The notes under the pieces are model-generated. The model did not search any database. It was not told the origin of the DNA and was given only the letters and a program-made list of their open reading frames with translations. A stretch of 64,000 nt of DNA from the sequence record LR745208.1. One strand, given 5' to 3'. Shown piece by piece: positions 93 to 32,259 of the stretch (position 1 is the stretch's first letter; each line of letters begins with the position of its first letter). Made by a program: the position numbers and the translations under genes.

Positions 93-1535
93 ATGAAGGC
101 CAGGATCACATTATTGGACCCCGAAACCAATTCGGGGAAGGTTCACCAACTAGACTTACTCCATGCGGAGCATATCCAGTACGTCCAATCGTGTGTCAAG
201 TTGATGGTCTCCAACCGAATCTTCAATGTCCTCCCCTCAGGTCGGAAATCCTACTTCCCAACCTCGGAGATACTCTCTTCCCAACTAGTCAAAAACGCTC
301 AAGCTCAAGCAGTCGAGTTGGTTCATGGTTGGGTCAACGGAGTTTACGGTCGAACCCTCAAAGCCAAGATCACGGGACTCAAAGAAGACGGTACTTACAG
401 TGACTTGGAAGCCCTTCAGCTTTACACAATTGGGAAGTACCGGCTGACCCATGGAGGGAAATTTGGGAAGGGGACGATCTCTCAAGAACTCGTTGACCTG
501 TATTGGTCGTGGGTCTGGAATCCCGAGACTGTTGGAAACCCACCTACAATCAGCGAGCGATTTCCCCTGCGATTCACGGAGATGACCTGTACCTTCCGAG
601 AGTCCGGAGCATCTCATTTTCACGGTTGGTGGCTCAAGTTCTCCTCTTTGACTCGGTACAAAACCATCTTCCTTCCCCTCAAAGAGTCCCCCTTTCTTCG
701 TAAACGCAAGGATGTCCAGCTGACGGTCCTGGCCGCGAAGCGCCCCGACGGTCATTGGACCTTCCAATTCTCTGAGAAGTCAGAAGATCCGGTTCTCGAT
801 GGTTCGGCTGGCAAGTTGGGGATTGATGTTGGCTTGAATGTGTTGGCGGCCACTTCAAGCGGAACCCTCTATGGTCAACGATTTAAGGCCAAGTTCAACA
901 GGCTCCATAAGAGAGCTCAGTCCATCCGAGCTAACAGGAAACGACAAGGGTTCTTGGAGGATAGCCGTCGGTTGTGGGCCATGGAGCGGAGGCTCTCCGG
1001 CCAGATCAAGACGGCAACGAATACGGTAGCTAACCAGCTCGTGAAGAGCCACCCAAACACCACATTTGTGGTTGAGGATTTGGATCTCTCCAGTGCACCT
1101 GGGTCGAAAAGGTTTGCCTACAGGGCCCTTCAATCGAGTCTGGAGAGGAAAGCAGTTACGGAGAAGGTGAACCCGGCTTATACGAGTCAGGAATGTCCTT
1201 CGTGTCATTTCGTTTCCCGGAGTAACCGTCGGGGAGTAAAGTTTGTCTGCCAGAGTTGTGGCAGAAAGAGTCATGCGGATTTTGTTGGGGGATCCAATCT
1301 GCTCGGACGTTCCGGGGATAACCAGATTGGGTTGAAAACCTCAGTGAAGTCGGTGAAAGCGATCTTGGATGAAAGGCACCGCTTGCGGTTCAGATCACCA
1401 AGATCCCTGTTAGAAGGAGCTCACACCGATGAGCCCGAAGCTTACTGTGGGGGTATGGCTGGTAACAGCCTCACCCGCATAGCTCCAAAACAACCGATAC
1501 CCATTAAACCTCGCAAGAGGGATAAACGCGTATAG
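93..1535 (+). mobile_element. tnpB: IS200/IS605-family TnpB RNA-guided nuclease, no TnpA in window
   Basis: RuvC motifs LGIDVG, VVEDL, HADFVG; zinc finger CPSC..CQSC. Confidence 0.9.
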
Positions 1536-7628: not shown

Positions 7629-7703
7629 GCCCCATTGAGACATAGCGGCCTAATGCTCTGAGCTTTAACCTCAGGATCGCGAGTTCAAATCTCGCATGGG
7701 GCA
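7629..7703 (+). tRNA. tRNA with UUA anticodon (putative ochre suppressor, Glu-like body)
   Basis: acceptor GCCCCAT/ATGGGGC, anticodon arm CTGAG-CTTTAAC-CTCAG, T arm GCGAG-TTCAAAT-CTCGC. Confidence 0.8.
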
Positions 7704-7727
7704 CCCGCCAAAGGTGTAACTACAATC

Positions 7728-14325: not shown

Positions 14326-14565
14326 ATGGACGCCATCGTTTGGATCTCCAACCGCAACCATCCCACACAGACCACCTGCAAGGTCCTCCGAACAACCCCG
14401 ACCACGATCATCGTGGACATGGTCTATCCGCACACGACAACCAACCTCAAGTTCCGGCGCTCGGACGGCAACATGACCGGGGGCAAGGTGTCCTTCTGGC
14501 TGGACGCGGAGTCCCTGAAGCAGATCAACCGAGAGATCCTTGCCACCCACACAGGGAACTGCTAG
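14326..14565 (+). CDS. hypothetical protein
   Basis: ATG after cassette. Confidence 0.75.
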   Translation: MDAIVWISNRNHPTQTTCKVLRTTPTTIIVDMVYPHTTTNLKFRRSDGNMTGGKVSFWLDAESLKQINREILATHTGNC

Positions 14566-15269
14566 TCCCAGTCGAGCATGCAGCCAAGATGGGTTGCATG
14601 CTCTTCAATGCTGTCCGCCATATCCTCAGCGGTCCTAGCCTGCTGCCCAGCGTCCTCTTCCATGACAGGACACCATGGGGCATTGAAGGACGTAGTGGGG
14701 ATACCTCGTGGGGTTCCTACCATAATTTTCTCAACGGGGCCAACCCCTGCCAGGGTCCTCGTGTAGTGGAGCCCATCGGGGCTTGGCTTGACCGGCTTCC
14801 CAAGGATTTCGGGTACATGGGCCGCACATATGACGGGTGCCCCACCAGCCAGGACAAGCTTCTCAACCCCATGGGAGACCTCACTGTATTGTCCAGGCTG
14901 GCGATAGACACGGCTCAGGAGGCTCTTGATGGCACCCCTTCCTTCGGCGCTACCATTGGACCCTGCTAGACCTCCCTTGACACCGAACCGGGTTTTCTTG
15001 CATAGCTTGAAGGCAACAGGCGTTTCCCCATCGAAGTAAATTGACCATACATCAAACTCATTCAACCCTTGGGGGGAGGAAATGATCAGCCCCAATTGCC
15101 TGTAGGTAACTTCATACATTGCCCACACTGCATCCCTGTACTGGTCGTAGTCCCCATGCCCTATCTCAGTCCATTGCCCCATTGCTTCCTTGAGAAGGGG
15201 GAGGAGGTGGGGCCGAAGAGCCGGATTCTCGTGGGCAAGTCGGACCAGTTTGGATCGAAGGGTCACCAT
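14562..15269 (-). CDS. protein with TLRSKLVRLAH leader
   Basis: shared N-terminal motif. Confidence 0.8.
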   Translation of the reverse strand: MVTLRSKLVRLAHENPALRPHLLPLLKEAMGQWTEIGHGDYDQYRDAVWAMYEVTYRQLGLIISSPQGLNEFDVWSIYFDGETPVAFKLCKKTRFGVKGGLAGSNGSAEGRGAIKSLLSRVYRQPGQYSEVSHGVEKLVLAGGAPVICAAHVPEILGKPVKPSPDGLHYTRTLAGVGPVEKIMVGTPRGIPTTSFNAPWCPVMEEDAGQQARTAEDMADSIEEHATHLGCMLDWD

Positions 15270-15288
15270 GAAACGGTAGGGGTATAGG

Positions 15289-15334
15289 CGATTCCGCTAA
15301 AAATCTCCCCTCTCGTGCCGATAGGGTATTGAGG
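15289..15334 (+). promoter_or_regulatory. sigma28-type promoter cassette (identical to 15584 copy)
   Basis: 58 bp identity including ATGAACATGA. Confidence 0.8.
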
Positions 15335-19464: not shown

Positions 19465-20316
19465 TTAGTCGATCACTTCAACGTGGGTGATCTTCACTTT
19501 GTGGGGATCGAACACGGCCACTTCGGGGACACCACTCACGAGGTCTGACCCGTAGTAGATGACCGAATCATAGCCCCGGCTTTTGGCCCTTTTGGCCTGA
19601 GCCTTGCTGGATGTGATGAGGGTATTGAAGACGGTAGCCACAACCGTATAGACCTTGGGGCGGTAGGCCGATGAGTCCAGGCCCACCTCATCCAAGGTGT
19701 CGTAGAGGTAGCCGGGAGCCCCAGTCGGTGCCCCACCAAACATGTCCAGTGGGGACTCCCCACTCCCAAGGGGCTTTACCTTGCTACCAATGATGTACCC
19801 GGCAACGTCATTGATAGAGTTTGGGTCTACTCCCAAGAACTTCTCAAATCCCATTGTGTCGAGGGTCCCTTGACCTGGAGTAGGATTGTCGTTCCAGAAG
19901 CCTGTGGCCCGAGGATACGTCTCCCATGCGTCAACACCCCCTTTGTAAAGGGCCTCCAGCATCCCACCGGCATTGCGGTTCTGGCTCTTGAGATCATCAA
20001 TGATTGAGGGGTCGAACCCAATGTTGCGGTTGGCCTCTGCGTACTTCTCAGCAACGTGCTTGTAGGGAGTTAGGAAGATTCCCCGGCCGTAAAACTTGTT
20101 GACCAGTTCGTCCCGGCCACGGTTCATGTCAAAGGTCTTGAAGAAAGCCGTGGTGCCATGGTAGAGGGTCGTGGGTTTCCCCTCAGGGAGCCCCTCAAGG
20201 TCATAGTTGGATAGGTTGAGAGTCTTGGCTCCCTGGAGGAGATGCCGGAAGGCAACCTTGATGGGACTGGCCTGAGGGCTCATTAGGTGTCCAACAGGGC
20301 CATTTTCGTGAGCCAT
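19465..20316 (-). CDS. ADP-ribosyltransferase-like protein with KVAFRHL leader
   Basis: LYHGT..FD..GRGIFLT..AEKYA, GYDSV, EVAVFDP. Confidence 0.6.
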   Translation of the reverse strand: MAHENGPVGHLMSPQASPIKVAFRHLLQGAKTLNLSNYDLEGLPEGKPTTLYHGTTAFFKTFDMNRGRDELVNKFYGRGIFLTPYKHVAEKYAEANRNIGFDPSIIDDLKSQNRNAGGMLEALYKGGVDAWETYPRATGFWNDNPTPGQGTLDTMGFEKFLGVDPNSINDVAGYIIGSKVKPLGSGESPLDMFGGAPTGAPGYLYDTLDEVGLDSSAYRPKVYTVVATVFNTLITSSKAQAKRAKSRGYDSVIYYGSDLVSGVPEVAVFDPHKVKITHVEVID

Positions 20317-20732
20317 CCAAAGACTTCCCGCTTTGACAGTAGGGCCAGTTCCTTGCGGGTCTTGAGATCAAAAGCTACAAACTGGGCTGCATTCTGCTTC
20401 CCAGTCGTAGGCAGGGCTGCCACGGGTTGCCCTGGTACCCGAAGGATCCATTGACCCTCTAGTTTCTCCCATTTTGCCTGATTGTCCAGGATCGTCTGGT
20501 GCCTCTGGTTCTCTTCCGTACCTGGAGTCTGGAGGTTGTTGTGGTACTGGTCCCGTAGGGCCACCTCCCGTTGCTCACGTCGCAATGCAGATGGCATCCA
20601 TTTGGCAATGGCCTCTTCATCCACGTCCCTCTTTTTGGGGCCACCAGCCGCTTCCTTCAATAGCGGAAGCAATTGCCCACGCAACTCGGGATTGGCATGT
20701 GCCAGACGAATGAGCTTGGAGCGAAGGGTCAT
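20283..20732 (-). CDS. protein with TLRSKLIRLAH leader
   Basis: shared N-terminal motif. Confidence 0.8.
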   Translation of the reverse strand: MTLRSKLIRLAHANPELRGQLLPLLKEAAGGPKKRDVDEEAIAKWMPSALRREQREVALRDQYHNNLQTPGTEENQRHQTILDNQAKWEKLEGQWILRVPGQPVAALPTTGKQNAAQFVAFDLKTRKELALLSKREVFGWLTKMALLDT

Positions 20733-20915
20733 ACTTGGGGGCCTTGGATAGCCAGTTTAGGGTCTTACACCCAAATGTCGGCGATAAGCAACTTCCCGGA
20801 ATGTTGCTTATCGTACACTCTTAACTGGCGAAACCTTGCCTGGACGGGCACCGGGCAACGACTAACCGGCGAATTGTTGCAGGGACCCCTATTCCCCCTA
20901 TCCCCAGCACCCCGT

Positions 20916-25753: not shown

Positions 25754-25799
25754 CGATTTCGCTAAAAAGTCCCCTTCCCGTACCGATAGGGTTGTGAGG
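25754..25799 (+). promoter_or_regulatory. sigma28-type promoter cassette
   Basis: motif copy. Confidence 0.8.
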
Positions 25800-27490: not shown

Positions 27491-29038
27491 ATGACCAACA
27501 CCAACCTGACACCCCCCTCCGCCGCCCCAACCAAATACACCCTTCACCACGGGGACTGCTTGGATGTCCTCAAGTCCCTACCAGCCAATTCCGTGGACGC
27601 CATCGTTACGGATCCCCCGGCAGGGATCAACTTCATGGGCAAGGATTGGGATAAGGACAAGGGTGGGCGGGACAAGTGGGTTGCTTGGATGACCGAGATA
27701 TCTCGTGAATGCATCCGCGTCATCAAGCCCGGTGGCCATGCCCTCGTGTGGGCAATTGGTCGCACATCTCATTGGACCGGCTGGGCCTGGGAGGATGCTG
27801 GCTGGGAAGTACGCGAAAAAATTACGCATTTGAATGGGCAGGGATTTCCGAAATCGTTGGATGTCAGCAAGGCGTTGGACAAACAGGCCGGAGCCGAGAG
27901 GGAAGTGGTTGGGTCGAAGGTGGGGCAACCAGGATACTCTGTGGCTCCTGGAAAAGGGCGCAACACCCTCAACTCGGCGAACGATGGCAGCCTCAACAAT
28001 TCTGACGCCGAATGTCAGATCACAGCCCCCTCCACCGACGCCGCTAAGAAGTGGGACGGTTGGGGGACGGCACTGAAACCTTCTAGTGAAGACTGGTGGA
28101 TGTTCCGTAAGCCCCTTGAAGGCACCGTAGCAGCCAATGTATTGGCCCATGGAACCGGGGCGCTCAATATCGATGGGTGTAGAATTGGATGTGAGTCTCG
28201 CCCTATCAACAACTACTCAAGTGAGGGGGCTCAAGGCTGTATGTCCCATGGTGAGGGTAAGGGTCACTCAGGTAAGGAGTACACAACCACGACAGTGTCC
28301 CAGGGCAGGTGGCCCGCAAACGCCGTCCTCAGCCACAACGAGGATTGCGTCGAAGTAGGCACCAGGAAGGTCAAGACCGGTACTGCCACCTTCAAGAATA
28401 CAGATGCCGGGACCGTGCTGGACTCCTACAGTGGGGGGCTGAAACGCCAGGACCACGGTGAGTATGGCCACGCAGACCCCGATGGCACCGAAACCGTACC
28501 CGCCTGGGATTGCACCCCCGATTGCCCCGTACGGATGTTGGACGAACAGAGCCTTGCTGGAGGCATGCACAGTGCTGGAGCCGCCCGAGACAAAACAGTA
28601 ACCTCAACCTATGAAGCATCCTCCTATGACCTGTCTGGACCCAGACCCATGGGGAGGCTAGGGGACACAGGAGGAGCCAGTAGATTCTTCTACTGCGCCA
28701 AAGCCTCCAAAGGTGACCGGGGCGAGGGTAACAATCACCCCACCGTAAAATCACAATCTCTTATGGTTTGGCTTTGCAGGCTAATCTGCCCACCCGGTGG
28801 GACCATCCTGGATCCCTTCCTGGGCAGTGGTACCACCGGTATCGCCGCCCTACTTGAGGGGTTCCGGTTCATTGGCATCGAGAAGGAGCTACCCTACTTC
28901 GAGATCGCTAAGGGACGAATCGAAAACTACAACCAACCAAAGGCTGCCCCCAAGGCGGCAACTAAGGTGGAGGGGGCAACTGAGGGTAAGAACCCCACCA
29001 CACCCGATACAGGCTCCATCCTGGACATGTTCGGGTGA
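27491..29038 (+). CDS. DNA N6-adenine/N4-cytosine methyltransferase (beta class)
   Basis: VTDPP, HPTVKS, LDPFLGSGTT, IGIEKE. Confidence 0.92.
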   Translation: MTNTNLTPPSAAPTKYTLHHGDCLDVLKSLPANSVDAIVTDPPAGINFMGKDWDKDKGGRDKWVAWMTEISRECIRVIKPGGHALVWAIGRTSHWTGWAWEDAGWEVREKITHLNGQGFPKSLDVSKALDKQAGAEREVVGSKVGQPGYSVAPGKGRNTLNSANDGSLNNSDAECQITAPSTDAAKKWDGWGTALKPSSEDWWMFRKPLEGTVAANVLAHGTGALNIDGCRIGCESRPINNYSSEGAQGCMSHGEGKGHSGKEYTTTTVSQGRWPANAVLSHNEDCVEVGTRKVKTGTATFKNTDAGTVLDSYSGGLKRQDHGEYGHADPDGTETVPAWDCTPDCPVRMLDEQSLAGGMHSAGAARDKTVTSTYEASSYDLSGPRPMGRLGDTGGASRFFYCAKASKGDRGEGNNHPTVKSQSLMVWLCRLICPPGGTILDPFLGSGTTGIAALLEGFRFIGIEKELPYFEIAKGRIENYNQPKAAPKAATKVEGATEGKNPTTPDTGSILDMFG

Positions 29039-29048
29039 TGCAACCCCA

Positions 29049-29535
29049 ATGAACCTCTTCATCCTTCACGAAAACCCCACCCTCGCATCCCACATGATGT
29101 GTGACCAGCATGTCGTCAAAATGCCAACCGAAACCGCTCAAATGCTATCCACGGTCGCACGGGCACATGGATTCGACGTGGGATACAAGACCACCCACCC
29201 CAACCACCCCTGCACCCGCTGGATAGGAGAGTCCCTGGAAAACTTCGCCTAGGCATCCCAACACGGTATGGCCCTGTGCCACGAATTTAACTTCAGGTAC
29301 CTGCACCCACACGGCGCCCAAACGGTCATCCAAGAGATCCTTAGCAAGGTGGGGCATCTACTCCAACTACCCAATCAACCAACCAAGAACACCCTTCCCC
29401 CAAGTGATGCCCCCACAGTATAGGGGCAACGACCCAGTTACCGCCTATCGCCGATTCTACACCGAAGACAAAGTACGGTTCGCCTCATGGAGGAAAACAA
29501 GGCAACCCCCAGAATGGTGGCCCAGAAGGGTGTAA
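29049..29535 (+). pseudogene. pyrimidine-dimer DNA glycosylase-like gene, TAG at 29250 plus frameshift near 29390
   Basis: MNLFIL..DQHVVKM..AQMLST..THPNHPC; downstream frame VTAYRRFY..PPEWW. Confidence 0.8.
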
Positions 29536-29558
29536 CTACCCTCAACAGGAGCCAATTG

Positions 29559-29969
29559 ATGAAGTTTATGTACCTGCGCCTCAATAAGTCCACCAACCCA
29601 CGAGTGACCGTCGCCTACATGACGGTATCTGAAGCCAATGGCCCACAGGCCATCCAGTTCGGCTACGCCATCCGTGCTCCTAACGACCCCTGGAACCGAA
29701 ACCGCGCTCGCCTGATCGCCGAAGGACGCATGTTCGCCTCCATGGTACGGGCTCCCAAGGAGCCCACCACCAAGGCCCCCACACAGGCCAGCGGATCCAT
29801 CCCCCTGGACACCACCCCAGGTAACCCCCCAGACCAGCAAATCCTCGACGCCCTCACCGCCCTGCCCGATACCTTCATGTGCGCCGCCACCGTCCGCAAG
29901 TACGCCAAGATGGTCAGGGAAGCCAGGACAATTCGGGTGGTGGCTCAGAGCACCGTCTCGGCACCCTAA
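29559..29969 (+). CDS. phage hypothetical protein
   Basis: TVAY..P.D.WNRNRARLIAEGR. Confidence 0.7.
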   Translation: MKFMYLRLNKSTNPRVTVAYMTVSEANGPQAIQFGYAIRAPNDPWNRNRARLIAEGRMFASMVRAPKEPTTKAPTQASGSIPLDTTPGNPPDQQILDALTALPDTFMCAATVRKYAKMVREARTIRVVAQSTVSAP

Positions 29970-29978
29970 AGGGACGAC

Positions 29979-30302
29979 CAAGGGCCGGAGAGCCTAGGTC
30001 CCCCCATTCCAAATCGGGACCCAAAAATTTCTGGGTAGAAAAATCGGCCGAAAACGTATTGCTGTGGCAATCGGCAGAATTTAAATAGGAATGGGCCCTC
30101 ATGGACAATGAACCCTCACAGGACCAGCTACAAGCCCAGAAGGAAGCCCGCTGGCAAGAACTCCAAGAGTTCGGGACCCTCCACGACTGGGAGGGTGGAC
30201 AGAACATCCTCCAATGCCTCCTTCAGGAAAAAGGGACCTCTAGTGGGAGAGGACAGGGGGGATGTGACACAGGAACCAGACAAGGGCCGGAGAGCCTAGG
30301 TC
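29979..30302 (+). repeat. 22 bp direct repeat CAAGGGCCGGAGAGCCTAGGTC (29979, 30281)
   Basis: exact duplicate; related copy at 42369. Confidence 0.8.
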
Positions 30303-30550
30303 GCCCTTTGGGGTTCCTAATCAAAAGTCCAAAATTTTCAGGCCAAGAAATTGAGCCAACTCGTCCTGGCCTTGGCTTTCGGGGAGTTTAATAGGTTCCA
30401 CTATAGGAATCAGGGGCTAATACCTGGATATCAAAGGGGTTTTCCAAATTGGTGTCCCTATTCCAATGTCGGTTGAATGTAGGTCCTGGGCCTACATGGG
30501 ACCCACATGTAAGTCTATTAACCGGTTCTACAGACCCGGGGGACGGGCGA

Positions 30551-30934
30551 TGTCAAGTGAATCAGTGCTGTCAAGTGAAATCGTACGTCGATTTTTCTGT
30601 TGACATCATCCCATACGATTGCCCTTGACATGCCCCGCACCCCATGCCCGCAAGGGGCCGGACCCCCCATGGTGCCCCTACCCCTGTCAAGCCAATTCGT
30701 CTGTCAAGAGAAATCGACTGGTACGAATTTGGTGCTTGACATGCCACCAACTATTAGGAGTTGCCGAATGGTTGGTTCCCGGACCCGGCCGTTGGCCCAC
30801 AGGGTCAGGTGCCTGTCAAGAGAAATCGCCCACAGAAGGGGCATCCCCTGGGGGAACCTTGTCAAGGGAAATCACCTAGCTCCTCCCGGATCAACGAAGG
30901 CTTGGATCTTGGGACTTGTTGATTTGGCTTGACA
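30551..30934. repeat. array of 10 CGATTTNNCTTGACA-like sites, both orientations
   Basis: copies at 30551, 30569, 30589, 30616, 30685, 30702, 30724, 30814, 30860, 30920. Confidence 0.85.
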
Positions 30935-31283
30935 GGAAGTCAATGGCCCCGAGGAGCCACAGGAGGCGTCCTACCTCTTTGGATGCCTCACTGCGTTCCC
31001 CGTTGGGGTCTTTAGGGAACTTTATAGTGATGTCAGCAACAGTGAAGCCAATGCCATTGCCGATACCATTCTGGATTTCCATGGCATGTTCAGCATAGTC
31101 GATCCCGTACTGTTCACTGAGGTCCAGGATTGCAGCCTCCCTGGCATCCCAAGCCCGTTTGATATGCTCCATCAGGTTGATGGGTGCGCCGCCAGCGGTC
31201 TTGAGCAAGGGCAACAGATGGGGCCGGAGAGCCGGGTTCTCTTGGGCTAGGCGGATCAACTTGGAGCGAAGGGTAGGGGCCAT
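30891..31283 (-). CDS. protein with TLRSKLIRLA leader
   Basis: shared N-terminal motif. Confidence 0.75.
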   Translation of the reverse strand: MAPTLRSKLIRLAQENPALRPHLLPLLKTAGGAPINLMEHIKRAWDAREAAILDLSEQYGIDYAEHAMEIQNGIGNGIGFTVADITIKFPKDPNGERSEASKEVGRLLWLLGAIDFLSSQINKSQDPSLR

Positions 31284-31429
31284 ACACCCGGTCAGGGCAT
31301 AGGCCAAGTAGGGAGCCCCGAAATTGGAACAGGCAGGTCCCCTCCCCGGGTTCCTGCCTGTTTGGCTGGGGAAGATGAGAATCGGCTCCTTGGTGGTGCC
31401 CATGGTCACATAATTACCGGTACTTGTTT

Positions 31430-31639
31430 TCATTTGGGCTCCTGGACTCCGAGCCGGGCGTTCATGAATGCCTTGATTTCTAGCCACGCCTCCGCGCTGC
31501 CCGGCTCCCCTTTTATGGTTTTGATGAGGTCCACCGATATCACCATGTTTGGGTCATTTGCGAGCATCATCACGAGCTTGCCAACAGAGGTTTCGGTCAG
31601 GAGCTTGCTGATTTTGTTGACTGCGGGGGGTTTCTTCAT
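31430..31639 (-). CDS. hypothetical protein
   Basis: ATG after cassette. Confidence 0.7.
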   Translation of the reverse strand: MKKPPAVNKISKLLTETSVGKLVMMLANDPNMVISVDLIKTIKGEPGSAEAWLEIKAFMNARLGVQEPK

Positions 31640-31643
31640 GATG

Positions 31644-31690
31644 TCCTCAACTACCTATCGGCACGGGAGGAGGACTTTTTAGTGAAATCG
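31644..31690 (-). promoter_or_regulatory. sigma28-type promoter cassette
   Basis: motif copy. Confidence 0.8.
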
Positions 31691-31706
31691 GTGCCCCCAC
31701 CCTAGG

Positions 31707-31943
31707 CTAGTTGCTGGACTGGGCCGACAGGGCATTGATCTGGCGGGCGGTATCCACCATGCCCTGGAGGAGATCCTGGAGTTCGAGGAGCTTGTGGACA
31801 TCCTCCATGGGTAGCCGGTTGATTATGGCCAGGGCATCCTTCTCGCTCCGTACGGGCCCCATATAGAACAGCAACTCCCTGAGGTGGGGGTGCTTGGGGG
31901 CATGGCGGGCCATGAAGGCATCTGCGATCTTGTCGAGGGTCAT
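31707..31943 (-). CDS. hypothetical protein
   Basis: ORF with RBS. Confidence 0.7.
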   Translation of the reverse strand: MTLDKIADAFMARHAPKHPHLRELLFYMGPVRSEKDALAIINRLPMEDVHKLLELQDLLQGMVDTARQINALSAQSSN

Positions 31944-31988
31944 GGGAGGGACTCCTGAGGGATTGTTGGGTCAGAGGGTCAGATAGAT

Positions 31989-32204
31989 CTACGACAGGGC
32001 GTCCATGATGCCGGTCCGGATGGCCTGGATGGTTTCCTGTGACCACCGGTAGGAGCGGGCATCCGCCATGAGGTTGCCGACGATACCTTGGACATTGGCC
32101 CGGGTGACGGGGCCTACGGTGAACAGGAAATTCTCAACCGCCTTGCGGGACACGCCCGGCTGGCTGGCGAGGGATTCGATTCGTTCGTTGGTCAGGGTGG
32201 TCAT
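31989..32204 (-). CDS. phage hypothetical protein
   Basis: AVENFL..NL.ADARSYRW. Confidence 0.75.
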   Translation of the reverse strand: MTTLTNERIESLASQPGVSRKAVENFLFTVGPVTRANVQGIVGNLMADARSYRWSQETIQAIRTGIMDALS

Positions 32205-32212
32205 GGGGTTGT

Positions 32213-32259
32213 TCCTCAACTACCTATCGGTACGGGGATGGGACTTTTTAGCGAAATCG
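32213..32259 (-). promoter_or_regulatory. sigma28-type promoter cassette
   Basis: motif copy. Confidence 0.8.

What the first reader, a model, noticed from the sequence alone, without database searches (positions are those of the whole stretch)
30551..30934. Array of ten CGATTTNNCTTGACA sites: same upstream element, sigma70 -35, no -10
Seen: ten copies in 385 bp, six on - and four on +, two as inverted pairs (TGTCAAG..AAATCG-N5/7-CGA(T/A)TT..TTGACA). The 5' half equals the CGATTTC of the sigma28 cassettes, but CTAAAAA is replaced by CTTGACA; no good TATAAT lies 17 nt downstream and no gene follows. Inference: (a) iteron-like array for the protein that reads CGATTTC, linking replication and early transcription, or (b) a decoy array for sigma70 region 4, biasing RNAP towards sigma28 promoters.
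Basis: partly seen in the sequence, partly recalled or inferred. Interest (0 to 1): 0.8.

Follow-up and report, generated by a model that had tools for sequence, protein, structure and literature searches.

The report
Array of ten promoter-front-half binding sites
A 485-kb uncultured phage carries, at one place only, a conserved cluster of ten short DNA sites that look like the front half of its own promoters but cannot fire, so they most likely dock a transcription-linked DNA-binding protein; what that docking achieves is still open.

Summary
Ten copies of CGATTTnnCTTGACA lie in window 30551-30934, six on the - strand and four on the +. Seven fit the 15-mer within one mismatch (0.05 expected by chance). 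The other three have a 1-nt deletion or 2-3 extra spacer bases.

The window is the start of LR745208.1, a 485-kb uncultured phage. The motif occurs nowhere else in that genome, and the array is its densest 7-mer cluster. In a ~86%-identical relative all ten sites keep their order and orientation. Site bases are 95% identical against 75% between sites (p = 5e-7).

Each site joins the 9-bp module yGAwTTynC to CTTGACA(gg). The module precedes the -35 of about 50 sigma28-type early promoters. CTTGACA(gg) is the -35 region of the phage's few sigma70-type promoters. The register is the same, and no -10 of either type follows, so the sites are protein-binding sites, not promoters.

The array sits in a gene-free gap where two converging early-gene blocks end.

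My best reading (about 0.35) is a docking or titration locus for the factor that reads the promoter module. An iteron-type origin (about 0.22) has no direct support: no strong AT-rich element, DnaA box, nearby initiator gene or skew extreme. A sigma70 decoy is unlikely.

The parts
30551..30934 (.). The whole array: ten bipartite sites in 384 bp, arranged as three groups (sites 1-4, 5-7, 8-10)
   Evidence: unique in the 485-kb genome; conserved in relative L144
30551..30565 (-). Site 1, CTGATTCACTTGACA (1-nt deletion in the module). The relative has a perfect CGATTTCACTTGACA here.
30569..30583 (-). Site 2, CGATTTCACTTGACA (perfect); left arm of inverted pair A
30589..30605 (+). Site 3, CGATTTTTCTGTTGACA (spacer +2); right arm of inverted pair A, 5 nt from site 2
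   Evidence: identical in L144
30616..30630 (+). Site 4, CGATTGCCCTTGACA
30685..30699 (-). Site 5, CGAATTGGCTTGACA
30702..30716 (-). Site 6, CGATTTCTCTTGACA (perfect); left arm of inverted pair B
30724..30741 (+). Site 7, CGAATTTGGTGCTTGACA (spacer +3); right arm of pair B, 7 nt from site 6. The relative has a 7-nt insertion here that gives AGTGAAATCG, a perfect inverted match to the CGATTTCACT of its site 6.
30814..30828 (-). Site 8, CGATTTCTCTTGACA (perfect)
30860..30874 (-). Site 9, TGATTTCCCTTGACA. In the relative it reads CGATTTCTCTTGACT.
30920..30934 (+). Site 10, TGATTTGGCTTGACA, inside the 3' end of the minus-strand gene. The module half is lost in the relative, so this is the least certain site.
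30392..30890 (.). Gene-free gap that holds sites 1-9. It lies between the ends of two converging gene blocks.
   Evidence: TGA/TAA stops break every frame, so no long ORF appears even with TAG as sense; no Rfam family
30440..30550 (.). Flank left of the array, about 73% identical to the relative over the aligned part, GC 43-50%. It holds a 9-bp hairpin at about 30476-30500 with no U-tract. Its fold is not more stable than shuffles.
30891..31283 (-). Last gene of the right-hand (minus-strand) early block, 130 aa. It belongs to a family with a shared 28-aa N-terminal peptide. No Pfam, PHROG or PDB match.
29049..29969 (+). Last clear gene of the left-hand (plus-strand) block. The N-terminus matches pyrimidine-dimer glycosylase. 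Two in-frame TAG codons lie at 29250 and 29421.
31655..31690 (-). Nearest sigma28-type promoter cassette (CGATTTCACTAAAAA-N14-CCGATAG), for comparison of the shared module
25754..25789 (+). Last sigma28-type cassette of the left-hand block, heading the operon that ends at the array

Best explanation
The array is a selectively maintained cluster of ten bipartite protein-binding sites, and the sites are not promoters. Each site is a promoter front half. It has the 9-bp module yGAwTTynC, which in about 50 early promoters of this phage sits directly upstream of a sigma28-type -35. In the array the module is joined in the same register to CTTGACA(gg), the -35 region of the phage's few sigma70-type promoters. 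Nothing downstream could serve as a -10.

If TTGACA occupies -35 to -30, the module is centred near -41. That is where class II activators sit against sigma region 4 (inference).

I propose that each site docks the factor that reads the module together with a -35-reading domain of the sigma-region-4 type. That domain could be a second domain of the same protein, as in the two-domain monomeric repressors of cluster A mycobacteriophages. It could instead be sigma70 within holoenzyme, held in a closed complex that cannot open.

Ten strong composite sites at one locus would then act as a high-affinity sink or assembly point for the early-transcription factor. The roughly 50 promoters carry only the shared module plus a different -35. 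Such a sink would set a threshold or timing for when the factor occupies those promoters. Because of its position it may also stop read-through between the two converging early blocks.

Shown here: the sites, their uniqueness, their conservation, the shared module and register, and the lack of -10 elements and of genes.

Inferred: that one factor reads both site classes, the identity of the partner that reads the -35, and the sink role.
For: The sites are real and non-random.

They are unique in 485 kb. All hits with <=1 mismatch lie in the array. It is the top 7-mer cluster genome-wide.

There is purifying selection on the sites. Against relative L144, site bases are 133/140 identical and inter-site bases 148/197. 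Fisher p = 5e-7. The indels cluster between the sites, and order and orientation are kept.

The module is shared with the promoters. There are 52 sigma28-type cassettes, and 48 have CGATTTC within 2 mismatches directly upstream. The per-position tolerance is the same in both sets: G2, A3, T5, C9 and T10 fixed, and positions 1, 4, 6 and 7 variable.

The sites are not decayed promoter copies. Their downstream sequence scores like random DNA on the promoter spacer/-10 matrix (p = 0.22).

They are not promoters. No sigma70 -10 and no sigma28 -10 follows any site. No ORF follows and no RNA family matches.

TTGACA is a meaningful -35 in this system. Phage promoters at 144187, 174947 and 188766 read cCTTGACAgg-N17-cTATACT and are followed by ATG.

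The composite of module plus TTGACA occurs only in the array and never with a -10.

The position is at the convergence of the + block, whose last promoter is at 25754, and the - block, whose nearest promoter is at 31690.

There is precedent for an asymmetric site that contains TGTCAAG and is read by a monomer with two DNA-binding domains (PMC3029335, PMC9283540).

The phage encodes two paralogous proteins with a sigma-region-4 HTH followed by a second HTH-like segment, and with no region 2. They are possible readers.
Against: No binding protein has been identified.

The core tandem-region-4 protein has invariant recognition helices across a large phage clade. Yet the one metagenome scan for tandem array sites found this phage only, so that paralogue probably reads something else.

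A sink needs no particular location, so the convergent position is not explained by titration alone.

Ten sites per genome is a small buffer unless the factor is scarce.

Only one diverged relative was found, so conservation rests on a single pairwise comparison.

Site 10 lies in a coding region and is degraded in the relative.

The class II position rests on assuming sigma70-like geometry.

Nothing excludes a DNA-transaction role (replication, partition or packaging) for the same sites.
Confidence: 0.35

Rival explanations
1. Iteron-type replication origin or replication-control locus. An initiator binds the ten sites, as Rep proteins bind iterons. It also touches the shared module at early promoters, which would couple replication to early transcription.
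For: The locus is a unique, conserved cluster of about 15-bp asymmetric repeats in a gene-free gap. About 200 bp beside it has 43-48% GC in a 57% GC genome. From my own knowledge, mixed-orientation and irregularly spaced arrays are known (P1 incA, P4 ori/crr), and F RepE reads a sequence shared between iterons and its own operator. PMC13028717 describes RepE binding to iterons and to inverted repeats at its promoter.
Against: There is no DnaA box or IHF consensus. There is no pronounced AT-rich unwinding element. The spacing is irregular (17-85 bp) with no helical phasing. No recognisable initiator, helicase or primase lies in the ORFs searched within about 10 kb. The clamp loader is at about 420 kb. 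Cumulative GC skew has its minimum near 434 kb and maximum near 204 kb, not at 30.6 kb. About 50 promoters carrying the half-site is far more than initiator autoregulation needs.
Confidence: 0.22
2. Another cis-acting DNA-transaction site: a centromere for partition, or a recognition site for the small terminase (pac).
For: The locus is single, carries about ten repeats and is conserved. From my own knowledge, centromeres such as R1 parC and pac sites are repeat clusters, and small terminases often use HTH domains.
Against: Motif searches found no ParA-type Walker A motif and no convincing tubulin signature (the one hit was an 80-aa stop-to-stop fragment I judged spurious), and the one tyrosine-recombinase-like motif hit (204.7 kb) had no Pfam match. 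The neighbours searched are methyltransferases, a glycosylase-like gene and small unknown proteins. Neither model explains the link to promoter architecture. The terminase genes were not located.
Confidence: 0.12
3. Protein roadblock or insulator. Bound sites in both orientations stop RNA polymerase that arrives from the two converging early blocks, as stoperators block elongation in mycobacteriophage L5.
For: The array sits exactly where the two blocks meet. No convincing intrinsic terminator lies there: 4 terminator-like hits against 3.4 expected. Sites occur in both orientations. L5-type sites contain the same TGTCAAG and act in an orientation-dependent way (PMC3029335, PMC9283540).
Against: Stoperators are dispersed, whereas this motif occurs at one place only. 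The other convergence point, inferred from the GC skew near 204 kb, has no comparable 7-mer cluster. Site 10 lies upstream of the stop codon of the last gene, where a block would truncate its mRNA. Ten sites seem excessive for this role.
Confidence: 0.1
4. Decoy for sigma70 region 4 that shifts RNA polymerase towards the sigma28 promoters.
For: A perfect or near-perfect sigma70 -35 sits in promoter register at all ten sites with no -10. The phage relies heavily on sigma28-type promoters. phmmer found no region-2-containing sigma factor in the phage.
Against: A site that holds sigma70 holoenzyme also holds core enzyme, which cannot favour sigma28. Free sigma70 binds DNA poorly (established knowledge). 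Ten sites per genome are few. The phage itself uses sigma70-type promoters.
Confidence: 0.08
5. Real promoters of an unrecognised class, for example for small RNAs, that use the module plus TTGACA and an atypical or absent -10.
For: The front half has promoter-like geometry. The back-to-back pairs resemble divergent promoters. A few CGATTTC-N24-GTAAGAT elements elsewhere suggest the module can serve other core promoters.
Against: Nothing is conserved downstream among the ten sites. No RNA family matches and the flank has no stable conserved fold. Sites 1/2 and 5/6 lie 17-18 bp apart, so each upstream site would fire through its neighbour.
Confidence: 0.05

Closest known systems
Operator/stoperator sites of cluster A mycobacteriophages (L5 5'-GGTGGMTGTCAAG, Bxb1 5'-GTTACGWDTCAAG) and their monomeric two-domain repressor
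   Same: Both are asymmetric sites of 13-15 bp that contain TGTCAAG, the complement of a CTTGACA -35. Both join a constant -35-like half to a phage-specific half. Both occur in either orientation. The L5-type site is read by one polypeptide with two DNA-binding domains (PMC3029335, PMC9283540).
   Different: The specific half lies on the other side of TGTCAAG. L5 has 24-34 sites dispersed through the genome and oriented with transcription, whereas here all ten sit in one 385-bp cluster with none elsewhere. No homologue of the L5 repressor was identified. No lysogeny genes were seen.
Iteron arrays and their control loci (F oriS/incC with RepE, P1 oriR/incA)
   Same: Both are a cluster of about ten repeats for one protein, possibly with a titration role. 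In F, part of the repeat sequence recurs at a promoter that the same protein controls.
   Different: This array has no regular spacing, no unwinding element, no DnaA or IHF sites and no adjacent initiator gene. The shared half-site sits at about 50 promoters rather than one.
Class II activator-dependent promoters (activator centred near -41.5, contacting sigma region 4; e.g. lambda cI with sigma region 4, PDB 1rio)
   Same: The module abuts the -35 hexamer and is centred near -41. It is used with two different -35 types in one register.
   Different: In the array there is no -10, so no transcription is expected. The activator is hypothetical.
Decoy or titration loci such as E. coli datA for DnaA
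   Same: Both are a cluster of strong sites, at a locus that is not itself regulated, for a protein that acts elsewhere.
   Different: No protein is known here and no titration has been measured. The sites are hybrids of two promoter elements.

Membership tests
sigma70-type promoter | -35 hexamer close to TTGACA | tested here: met
   All ten sites carry TTGACA, nine of them as CTTGACA
sigma70-type promoter | -10 hexamer (TATAAT-like) 16-18 bp downstream | tested here: not met
   0 promoter-like sites in 29000-32000. None of the ten has TAnnnT at the right distance (read).
sigma70-type promoter | a transcribed gene or RNA downstream | tested here: not met
   No co-oriented ORF and no Rfam match. 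Transcription itself is not testable here.
sigma28-type early promoter cassette of this phage | upstream module CGATTTCnC | tested here: met
   Same module with the same tolerated variants
sigma28-type early promoter cassette of this phage | CTAAAAA -35, conserved C-rich spacer and CCGATAG -10, then RBS and ATG | tested here: not met
   TGACA replaces AAAAA. No GCCGATA within 1 mismatch in 30250-31000. The spacer/-10 matrix scores the sites like random DNA.
Iteron-type replication origin | several repeats of one binding site | tested here: met
Iteron-type replication origin | adjacent AT-rich unwinding element | tested here: inconclusive
   30290-30500 has 43-48% GC against a 57% genome mean. 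No sharp AT-rich block.
Iteron-type replication origin | DnaA boxes and/or IHF site | tested here: not met
   None in 30250-31000
Iteron-type replication origin | initiator gene next to the repeats | tested here: inconclusive
   The neighbours have no recognisable function. An unrecognised initiator cannot be excluded.
Iteron-type replication origin | strand-composition switch at the site | tested here: not met
   Cumulative GC-skew extremes are near 434 kb and 204 kb. The local sign change at 30.5 kb coincides with the coding-strand switch.
L5-type stoperator system | asymmetric site containing the -35 complement TGTCAAG | tested here: met
   L5 consensus from PMC3029335
L5-type stoperator system | tens of sites dispersed in intergenic gaps, oriented with transcription | tested here: not met
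   All sites lie in one cluster and none elsewhere in 485 kb
L5-type stoperator system | cognate monomeric repressor with two DNA-binding domains | not tested
   No search for an L5 gp71 homologue was made. The two tandem-HTH paralogues are candidates only by architecture.
Partition centromere | adjacent or genome-encoded partition NTPase and centromere-binding protein | tested here: not met
   Regex searches of all ORFs found no deviant Walker A and no convincing tubulin signature (one hit, in an 80-aa fragment, judged spurious). This is a crude test and actin-type ParM was not tested.
attP with arm-type integrase sites | tyrosine integrase gene nearby | tested here: not met
   No integrase domain in the neighbours. 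The only box-II-like motif, at 204.7 kb, had no Pfam hit.
pac/cos packaging site | DNA ends or headful start at the site; binding by small terminase | not testable with these tools
   Needs read-end analysis. The terminase genes were not located.

The most novel reading that the evidence does not exclude
The array is a DNA decoy built from promoter parts: ten 'dead' front halves. They would capture host sigma70 holoenzyme together with the phage's module-binding factor, or a phage sigma-region-4 protein, in closed complexes that cannot open. The phage would use its own replicating DNA as a growing sponge that retunes the host transcription machinery during the early-to-middle switch.
Probability: 0.1. 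Interest if true: 0.85.

Novelty: new variant of a known kind. Interest (0 to 1): 0.6.

Why it matters
Very little is known about how phages of this size regulate their genes. This genome offers a clear handle on the question:
- About 50 near-identical sigma28-type promoter cassettes each carry an extra upstream module.
- A single conserved array reuses that module with a different -35 and no -10.

Finding the protein that binds the array would probably also identify the factor that governs the whole early programme of this phage. It would also show whether clustered 'half promoters' serve as a sink, an insulator or an origin. If the sink reading is right, it would be a natural case of timing by decoy sites in a virus. 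If the array is an origin, it would be one whose repeats share a module with about 50 promoters of the same genome.

Tried and rejected
1. Searches for relatives of the array.
- A distant BLAST against phage records found only the same record.
- An inverted-pair pattern in viral contigs found only the same phage.
- Protein-based locus searches with both neighbours found only the same phage.
- The tandem-site pattern in metagenomes gave the same phage twice (L156, L182) plus chance hits. These were a eukaryote-like tandem repeat (L191/L196) and a duplicated bacterial sigma70 promoter before a transposase-like gene (L158).
- Homologues of the right-hand neighbour gave one useful relative, L144. 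The others share only the 28-aa N-terminal peptide and have no array.
- The left-hand neighbour has no homologues.

2. Host clue. The promoter cassette in bacterial genomes hit only a 2-kb contig of a Spirochaetes MAG, which is 100% identical to the phage itself.

3. Decayed-promoter idea. Rejected by the matrix test.

4. Structured RNA or terminator in the flank. The folds are no better than shuffles and the hairpin is not kept by compensating changes.

5. Coding under TAG recoding. Rejected for the array. Genome-wide ORF lengths do not call for recoding.

7. Core tandem-region-4 protein as the array reader. Weakened.

8. CAATCAGGT, an over-represented 9-mer. It has no flanking conservation and is explained by coding for Asp-Leu-Ile.

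9. Other repeat clusters (114-117 kb and others). They lie in long ORFs (114-117 kb) or show no comparable repeat family.

Full report
**Source.** The window is identical to bases 1-64000 of LR745208.1, an unannotated 485,034-bp 'uncultured phage' record. The same genome also appears as IMG/VR contig 3300025030_000038 and in several other assemblies. I fetched the remaining 421 kb in nine pieces and scanned it piece by piece.

**The observation.** Reading 30200-31300 confirms ten sites.
- Six are on the minus strand: 30551, 30569, 30685, 30702, 30814, 30860.
- Four are on the plus strand: 30589, 30616, 30724, 30920.
- Seven fit CGATTTNNCTTGACA with at most one mismatch. All seven are inside the array, against 0.05 expected.
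- Site 1 has a 1-nt deletion in the CGATTT half. Sites 3 and 7 have 2 and 3 extra bases between the halves.
- Sites 2/3 and 6/7 form back-to-back pairs with the CGATTT ends facing each other across 5 and 7 nt.
- Spacing between neighbouring sites runs from 17 to 85 bp, with no helical phasing.
- The pattern is -,-,+,+ / -,-,+ / -,-,+. That is three groups, each with minus-strand sites followed by plus-strand ones.

**Not coding, not RNA, not promoters.**
- TGA or TAA stops break every frame of 30392-30890, so no long ORF appears even with TAG read as sense.
- Rfam gives nothing credible.
- The left flank does not fold better than shuffles.
- The sigma70 promoter scan finds no site in 29000-32000. 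The bases 16-18 nt after each TTGACA are not TAnnnT.
- No GCCGATA-like -10 is present.
- Site 10 lies within the last codons of a minus-strand gene (30891-31283).

**The promoter family that shares the 5' half.**
- The window holds about 30 copies, and the genome 52, of a cassette with the logo g.CGATTTC.CTAAAAAgT..cCttCtCGTgCCGATAGGGt.TtgAgGa followed by ATG.
- TAAA-N15-GCCGATA is the classical sigma28/FliA/SigD promoter form (established knowledge).
- 48 of the 52 carry CGATTTC within two mismatches directly upstream.
- The cassettes are confined to the arc from about 460 kb through 0 to about 160 kb. They are on the + strand up to 25.8 kb, on the - strand from 31.7 kb to about 100 kb, and on the + strand again from 100 to 160 kb, with a few exceptions.
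- The array therefore lies where two early blocks converge, downstream of both.
The cassettes are therefore probably read by a host sigma28-type holoenzyme. This is an inference.

**How far the similarity goes.**
- The array and the cassettes share CGATTTCnCT, with the same per-position tolerance. G2, A3, T5, C9 and T10 are fixed. Positions 1, 4, 6 and 7 vary in the same ways. Position 8 is free.
- After that the cassettes read AAAAA and the array reads TGACA.
- Downstream, the array sites score like random DNA on the cassette spacer/-10 matrix (mean -27 against a null of -29, p = 0.22). They are therefore not decayed promoter copies.
- The phage has a few good sigma70-type promoters, cCTTGACAgg-N17-cTATACT followed shortly by ATG, at 144187, 174947 and 188766. 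None carries the module.
- Sigma70-consensus promoters are not enriched overall (25 found against about 20 expected).

This gives three combinations:
1. Module plus sigma28 core, about 50 copies.
2. Sigma70 core alone, a few copies.
3. Module plus sigma70-type -35 with no -10, ten copies, all in the array.

TTGACA and TAAA both begin at the tenth base after the start of the module. The module therefore keeps a fixed geometry with whatever reads the -35. With TTGACA at -35 to -30, the module centre is near -41, the class II activator position (inference from established promoter geometry).

A handful of CGATTTC-N24-GTAAGAT elements (22473, 141629, 167183, 190955) hint that the module can serve yet another core promoter. 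Four or five cases are too few to be sure.

**Uniqueness.** Across 485 kb, every hit to the 15-mer with at most one mismatch lies in the array. The two-mismatch hits elsewhere are scattered singles. A scan of 500-bp windows for the most repeated 7-mer ranks the array first in the genome, with CTTGACA nine times.

**Conservation.**
- The protein next to the array has an 87%-identical homologue on a 1.4-kb ENA contig, L144. That contig covers the gene and the whole array.
- All ten sites are present in the same order and orientation.
- Site bases are 133/140 identical and inter-site bases 148/197, while the gene is 86% identical. Fisher p = 5e-7.
- Indels cluster between the sites.
- Changes inside sites are mostly at the free position. 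Site 1 is a perfect 15-mer in the relative. Site 9 gains CGATTT but reads TTGACT. Site 7 carries a 7-nt insertion that gives AGTGAAATCG, a perfect inverted match to the CGATTTCACT of the relative's site 6 (7-nt spacer). Site 10, the one in coding sequence, loses its module half.
- This is one pairwise comparison only. All other searches returned the same phage or chance hits.

**Tests of a replication role.**
- No DnaA box and no IHF consensus lie in 30250-31000.
- GC falls only to 43-48% over about 200 bp left of the array, in a 57% GC genome.
- The ORFs searched within about 10 kb include two methyltransferases, a glycosylase-like gene with two in-frame TAG codons, an ADP-ribosyltransferase, a DnaJ-like protein, an HNH endonuclease and many small unknown proteins. 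None is a recognisable replication, partition, integration or packaging gene.
- A clamp loader sits near 420 kb.
- Cumulative GC skew has its minimum near 434 kb and its maximum near 204 kb, roughly half a genome apart. The local sign change at 30.5 kb coincides with the coding-strand switch.
- None of this excludes an origin, but nothing positively supports one.
- Crude motif searches found no ParA-type Walker A and no convincing tubulin signature (one weak hit in an 80-aa fragment). The one tyrosine-recombinase-like motif hit had no Pfam match.

**Candidate readers.**
- The phage encodes two paralogues: 419694-420284 on the minus strand and 153886-154692 on the plus strand. Each has a sigma-70 region 4 domain (Pfam E = 3e-10 and 5e-9) followed by a second HTH-like segment (read from the sequence; only faint Pfam HTH hits), with no region 2.
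- A profile of the two best matches region 4 of SigF and of FliA among solved structures.
- An AlphaFold model of the first paralogue (pLDDT 85) matches many -35-binding domains.
- The recognition helix of the second HTH is almost the same in both paralogues (VSQGxVRHR), while that of the first HTH differs. That pattern would suit one shared half-site and one variable half-site.
- The first paralogue is a core gene of a large clade of huge phages. It has 887 homologues and always follows a clamp loader and a KOW protein. Both recognition helices are invariant across 40 homologues. Yet the array motif was not found in relatives. That paralogue therefore probably reads some clade-wide promoter instead.
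- I keep the pair only as testable candidates.

**Closest known systems.**
- The site type most resembles the operator/stoperator sites of cluster A mycobacteriophages (L5 5'-GGTGGMTGTCAAG). These also contain TGTCAAG next to a phage-specific half and are bound by a monomer with two DNA-binding domains (PMC3029335, PMC9283540). Those sites are dispersed and oriented with transcription, which this array is not.
- Iteron arrays and control loci share the clustered repeats and the possible titration role. They do not share this array's irregular spacing or its lack of origin features.

**Verdict.**
- I am about 85% sure that these are protein-binding sites under selection, not promoters, and that they share a module with the early promoter system.
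- Their function is unresolved. I rank the options as follows: docking or titration locus for the early-promoter factor (0.35), iteron origin or control locus (0.22), centromere or pac site (0.12), roadblock (0.10), sigma70 decoy (0.08), unrecognised promoters (0.05).

Noticed in passing
whole window, e.g. 1600, 12942, 13194, 14007, 25754 (+); 31690, 32259, 32640, 35345 (-): The genome holds 52 near-identical sigma28-type promoter cassettes (CGATTTCnCTAAAAA-N14-CCGATAGgg, then RBS and ATG). Many head a single small gene. All lie in the arc from 460 kb through 0 to 160 kb. phmmer found no phage sigma factor with region 2, so the phage seems to run its early genes on a host flagellar-type sigma factor.
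   Followed up: partly
window 30894-31283 (-), 20286-20756 (-), 14565-15296 (-); also near 226, 275, 351, 352, 390, 398, 432 and 433 kb of the genome: At least 11 proteins begin with, or in one case contain, an almost identical 28-aa peptide, TLRSKLIRLAHeNPALRPhLLPLLKeA, followed by unrelated sequences. The same leader heads proteins on other large phage-like contigs. It looks like a targeting or processing signal.
   Followed up: partly
window 7629-7705 (+) and 29049-29969 (+): A suppressor-type tRNA has anticodon TTA. A glycosylase-like gene is interrupted by two in-frame TAG codons (29250, 29421) but stays open to a TAA stop. Genome-wide ORF lengths do not require TAG recoding, so this may be local read-through or a broken gene.
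   Followed up: partly
genome 419694-420284 (-) = L140:5694-6284; 153886-154692 (+) = L134:39886-40692: Two paralogous proteins have a sigma-region-4 HTH plus a second HTH-like segment, and no region 2. The first is a core gene of a large huge-phage clade and always follows a clamp loader and a KOW protein, an arrangement reminiscent of T4 late-transcription factors.
   Followed up: partly
L153 = MIBM01000156.1 (MAG 'Spirochaetes bacterium RIFOXYC1_FULL_54_7'): A 1986-bp contig binned into a Spirochaetes genome is 100% identical to the phage around 312-314 kb (about 312.2-314.2 kb). This is either a binning artefact or a weak clue to the host.
   Followed up: partly
genome 144187, 174947, 188766 (+): Good sigma70-type promoters, cCTTGACAgg-N17-cTATACT, followed by ATG and lacking the CGATTTC module. 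A second, small promoter class in the same phage.
   Followed up: partly
window 22473 (+); genome 141629, 167183, 190955 (+): CGATTTC is followed 24 nt later by GTAAGAT/GTAGTAT. This may be a third promoter class that uses the same module. A tRNA-like sequence begins about 0.6 kb downstream of the 167 kb copy.
   Followed up: no
window about 42300: GC skew flips from about -0.15 to +0.2 and AT skew flips the other way, although the long ORFs and promoter cassettes on both sides are mostly on the minus strand. The 42-59 kb segment has almost no sigma28 cassettes and holds a 1180-aa STAND-like NTPase. It may be a module of different origin or expression class.
   Followed up: no
window 93-1535 (+): A TnpB/Cas12f-like ORF (OrfB_IS605 plus TNB domain) at the start of the record.
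   Followed up: no
L140:6816-8702 (-), genome about 420.8-422.7 kb: The clamp-loader subunit gene contains an intein (HINT / intein splicing domain hits).
   Followed up: no
window 31707-31943 (-) and 31989-32219 (-): Two adjacent small early proteins share an LFxxGPV(R/T) core and look like paralogues. The second has an HTH-like stretch (SQPGVSRKAVENFL). Nothing matches in Pfam, PHROGs or PDB.
   Followed up: partly
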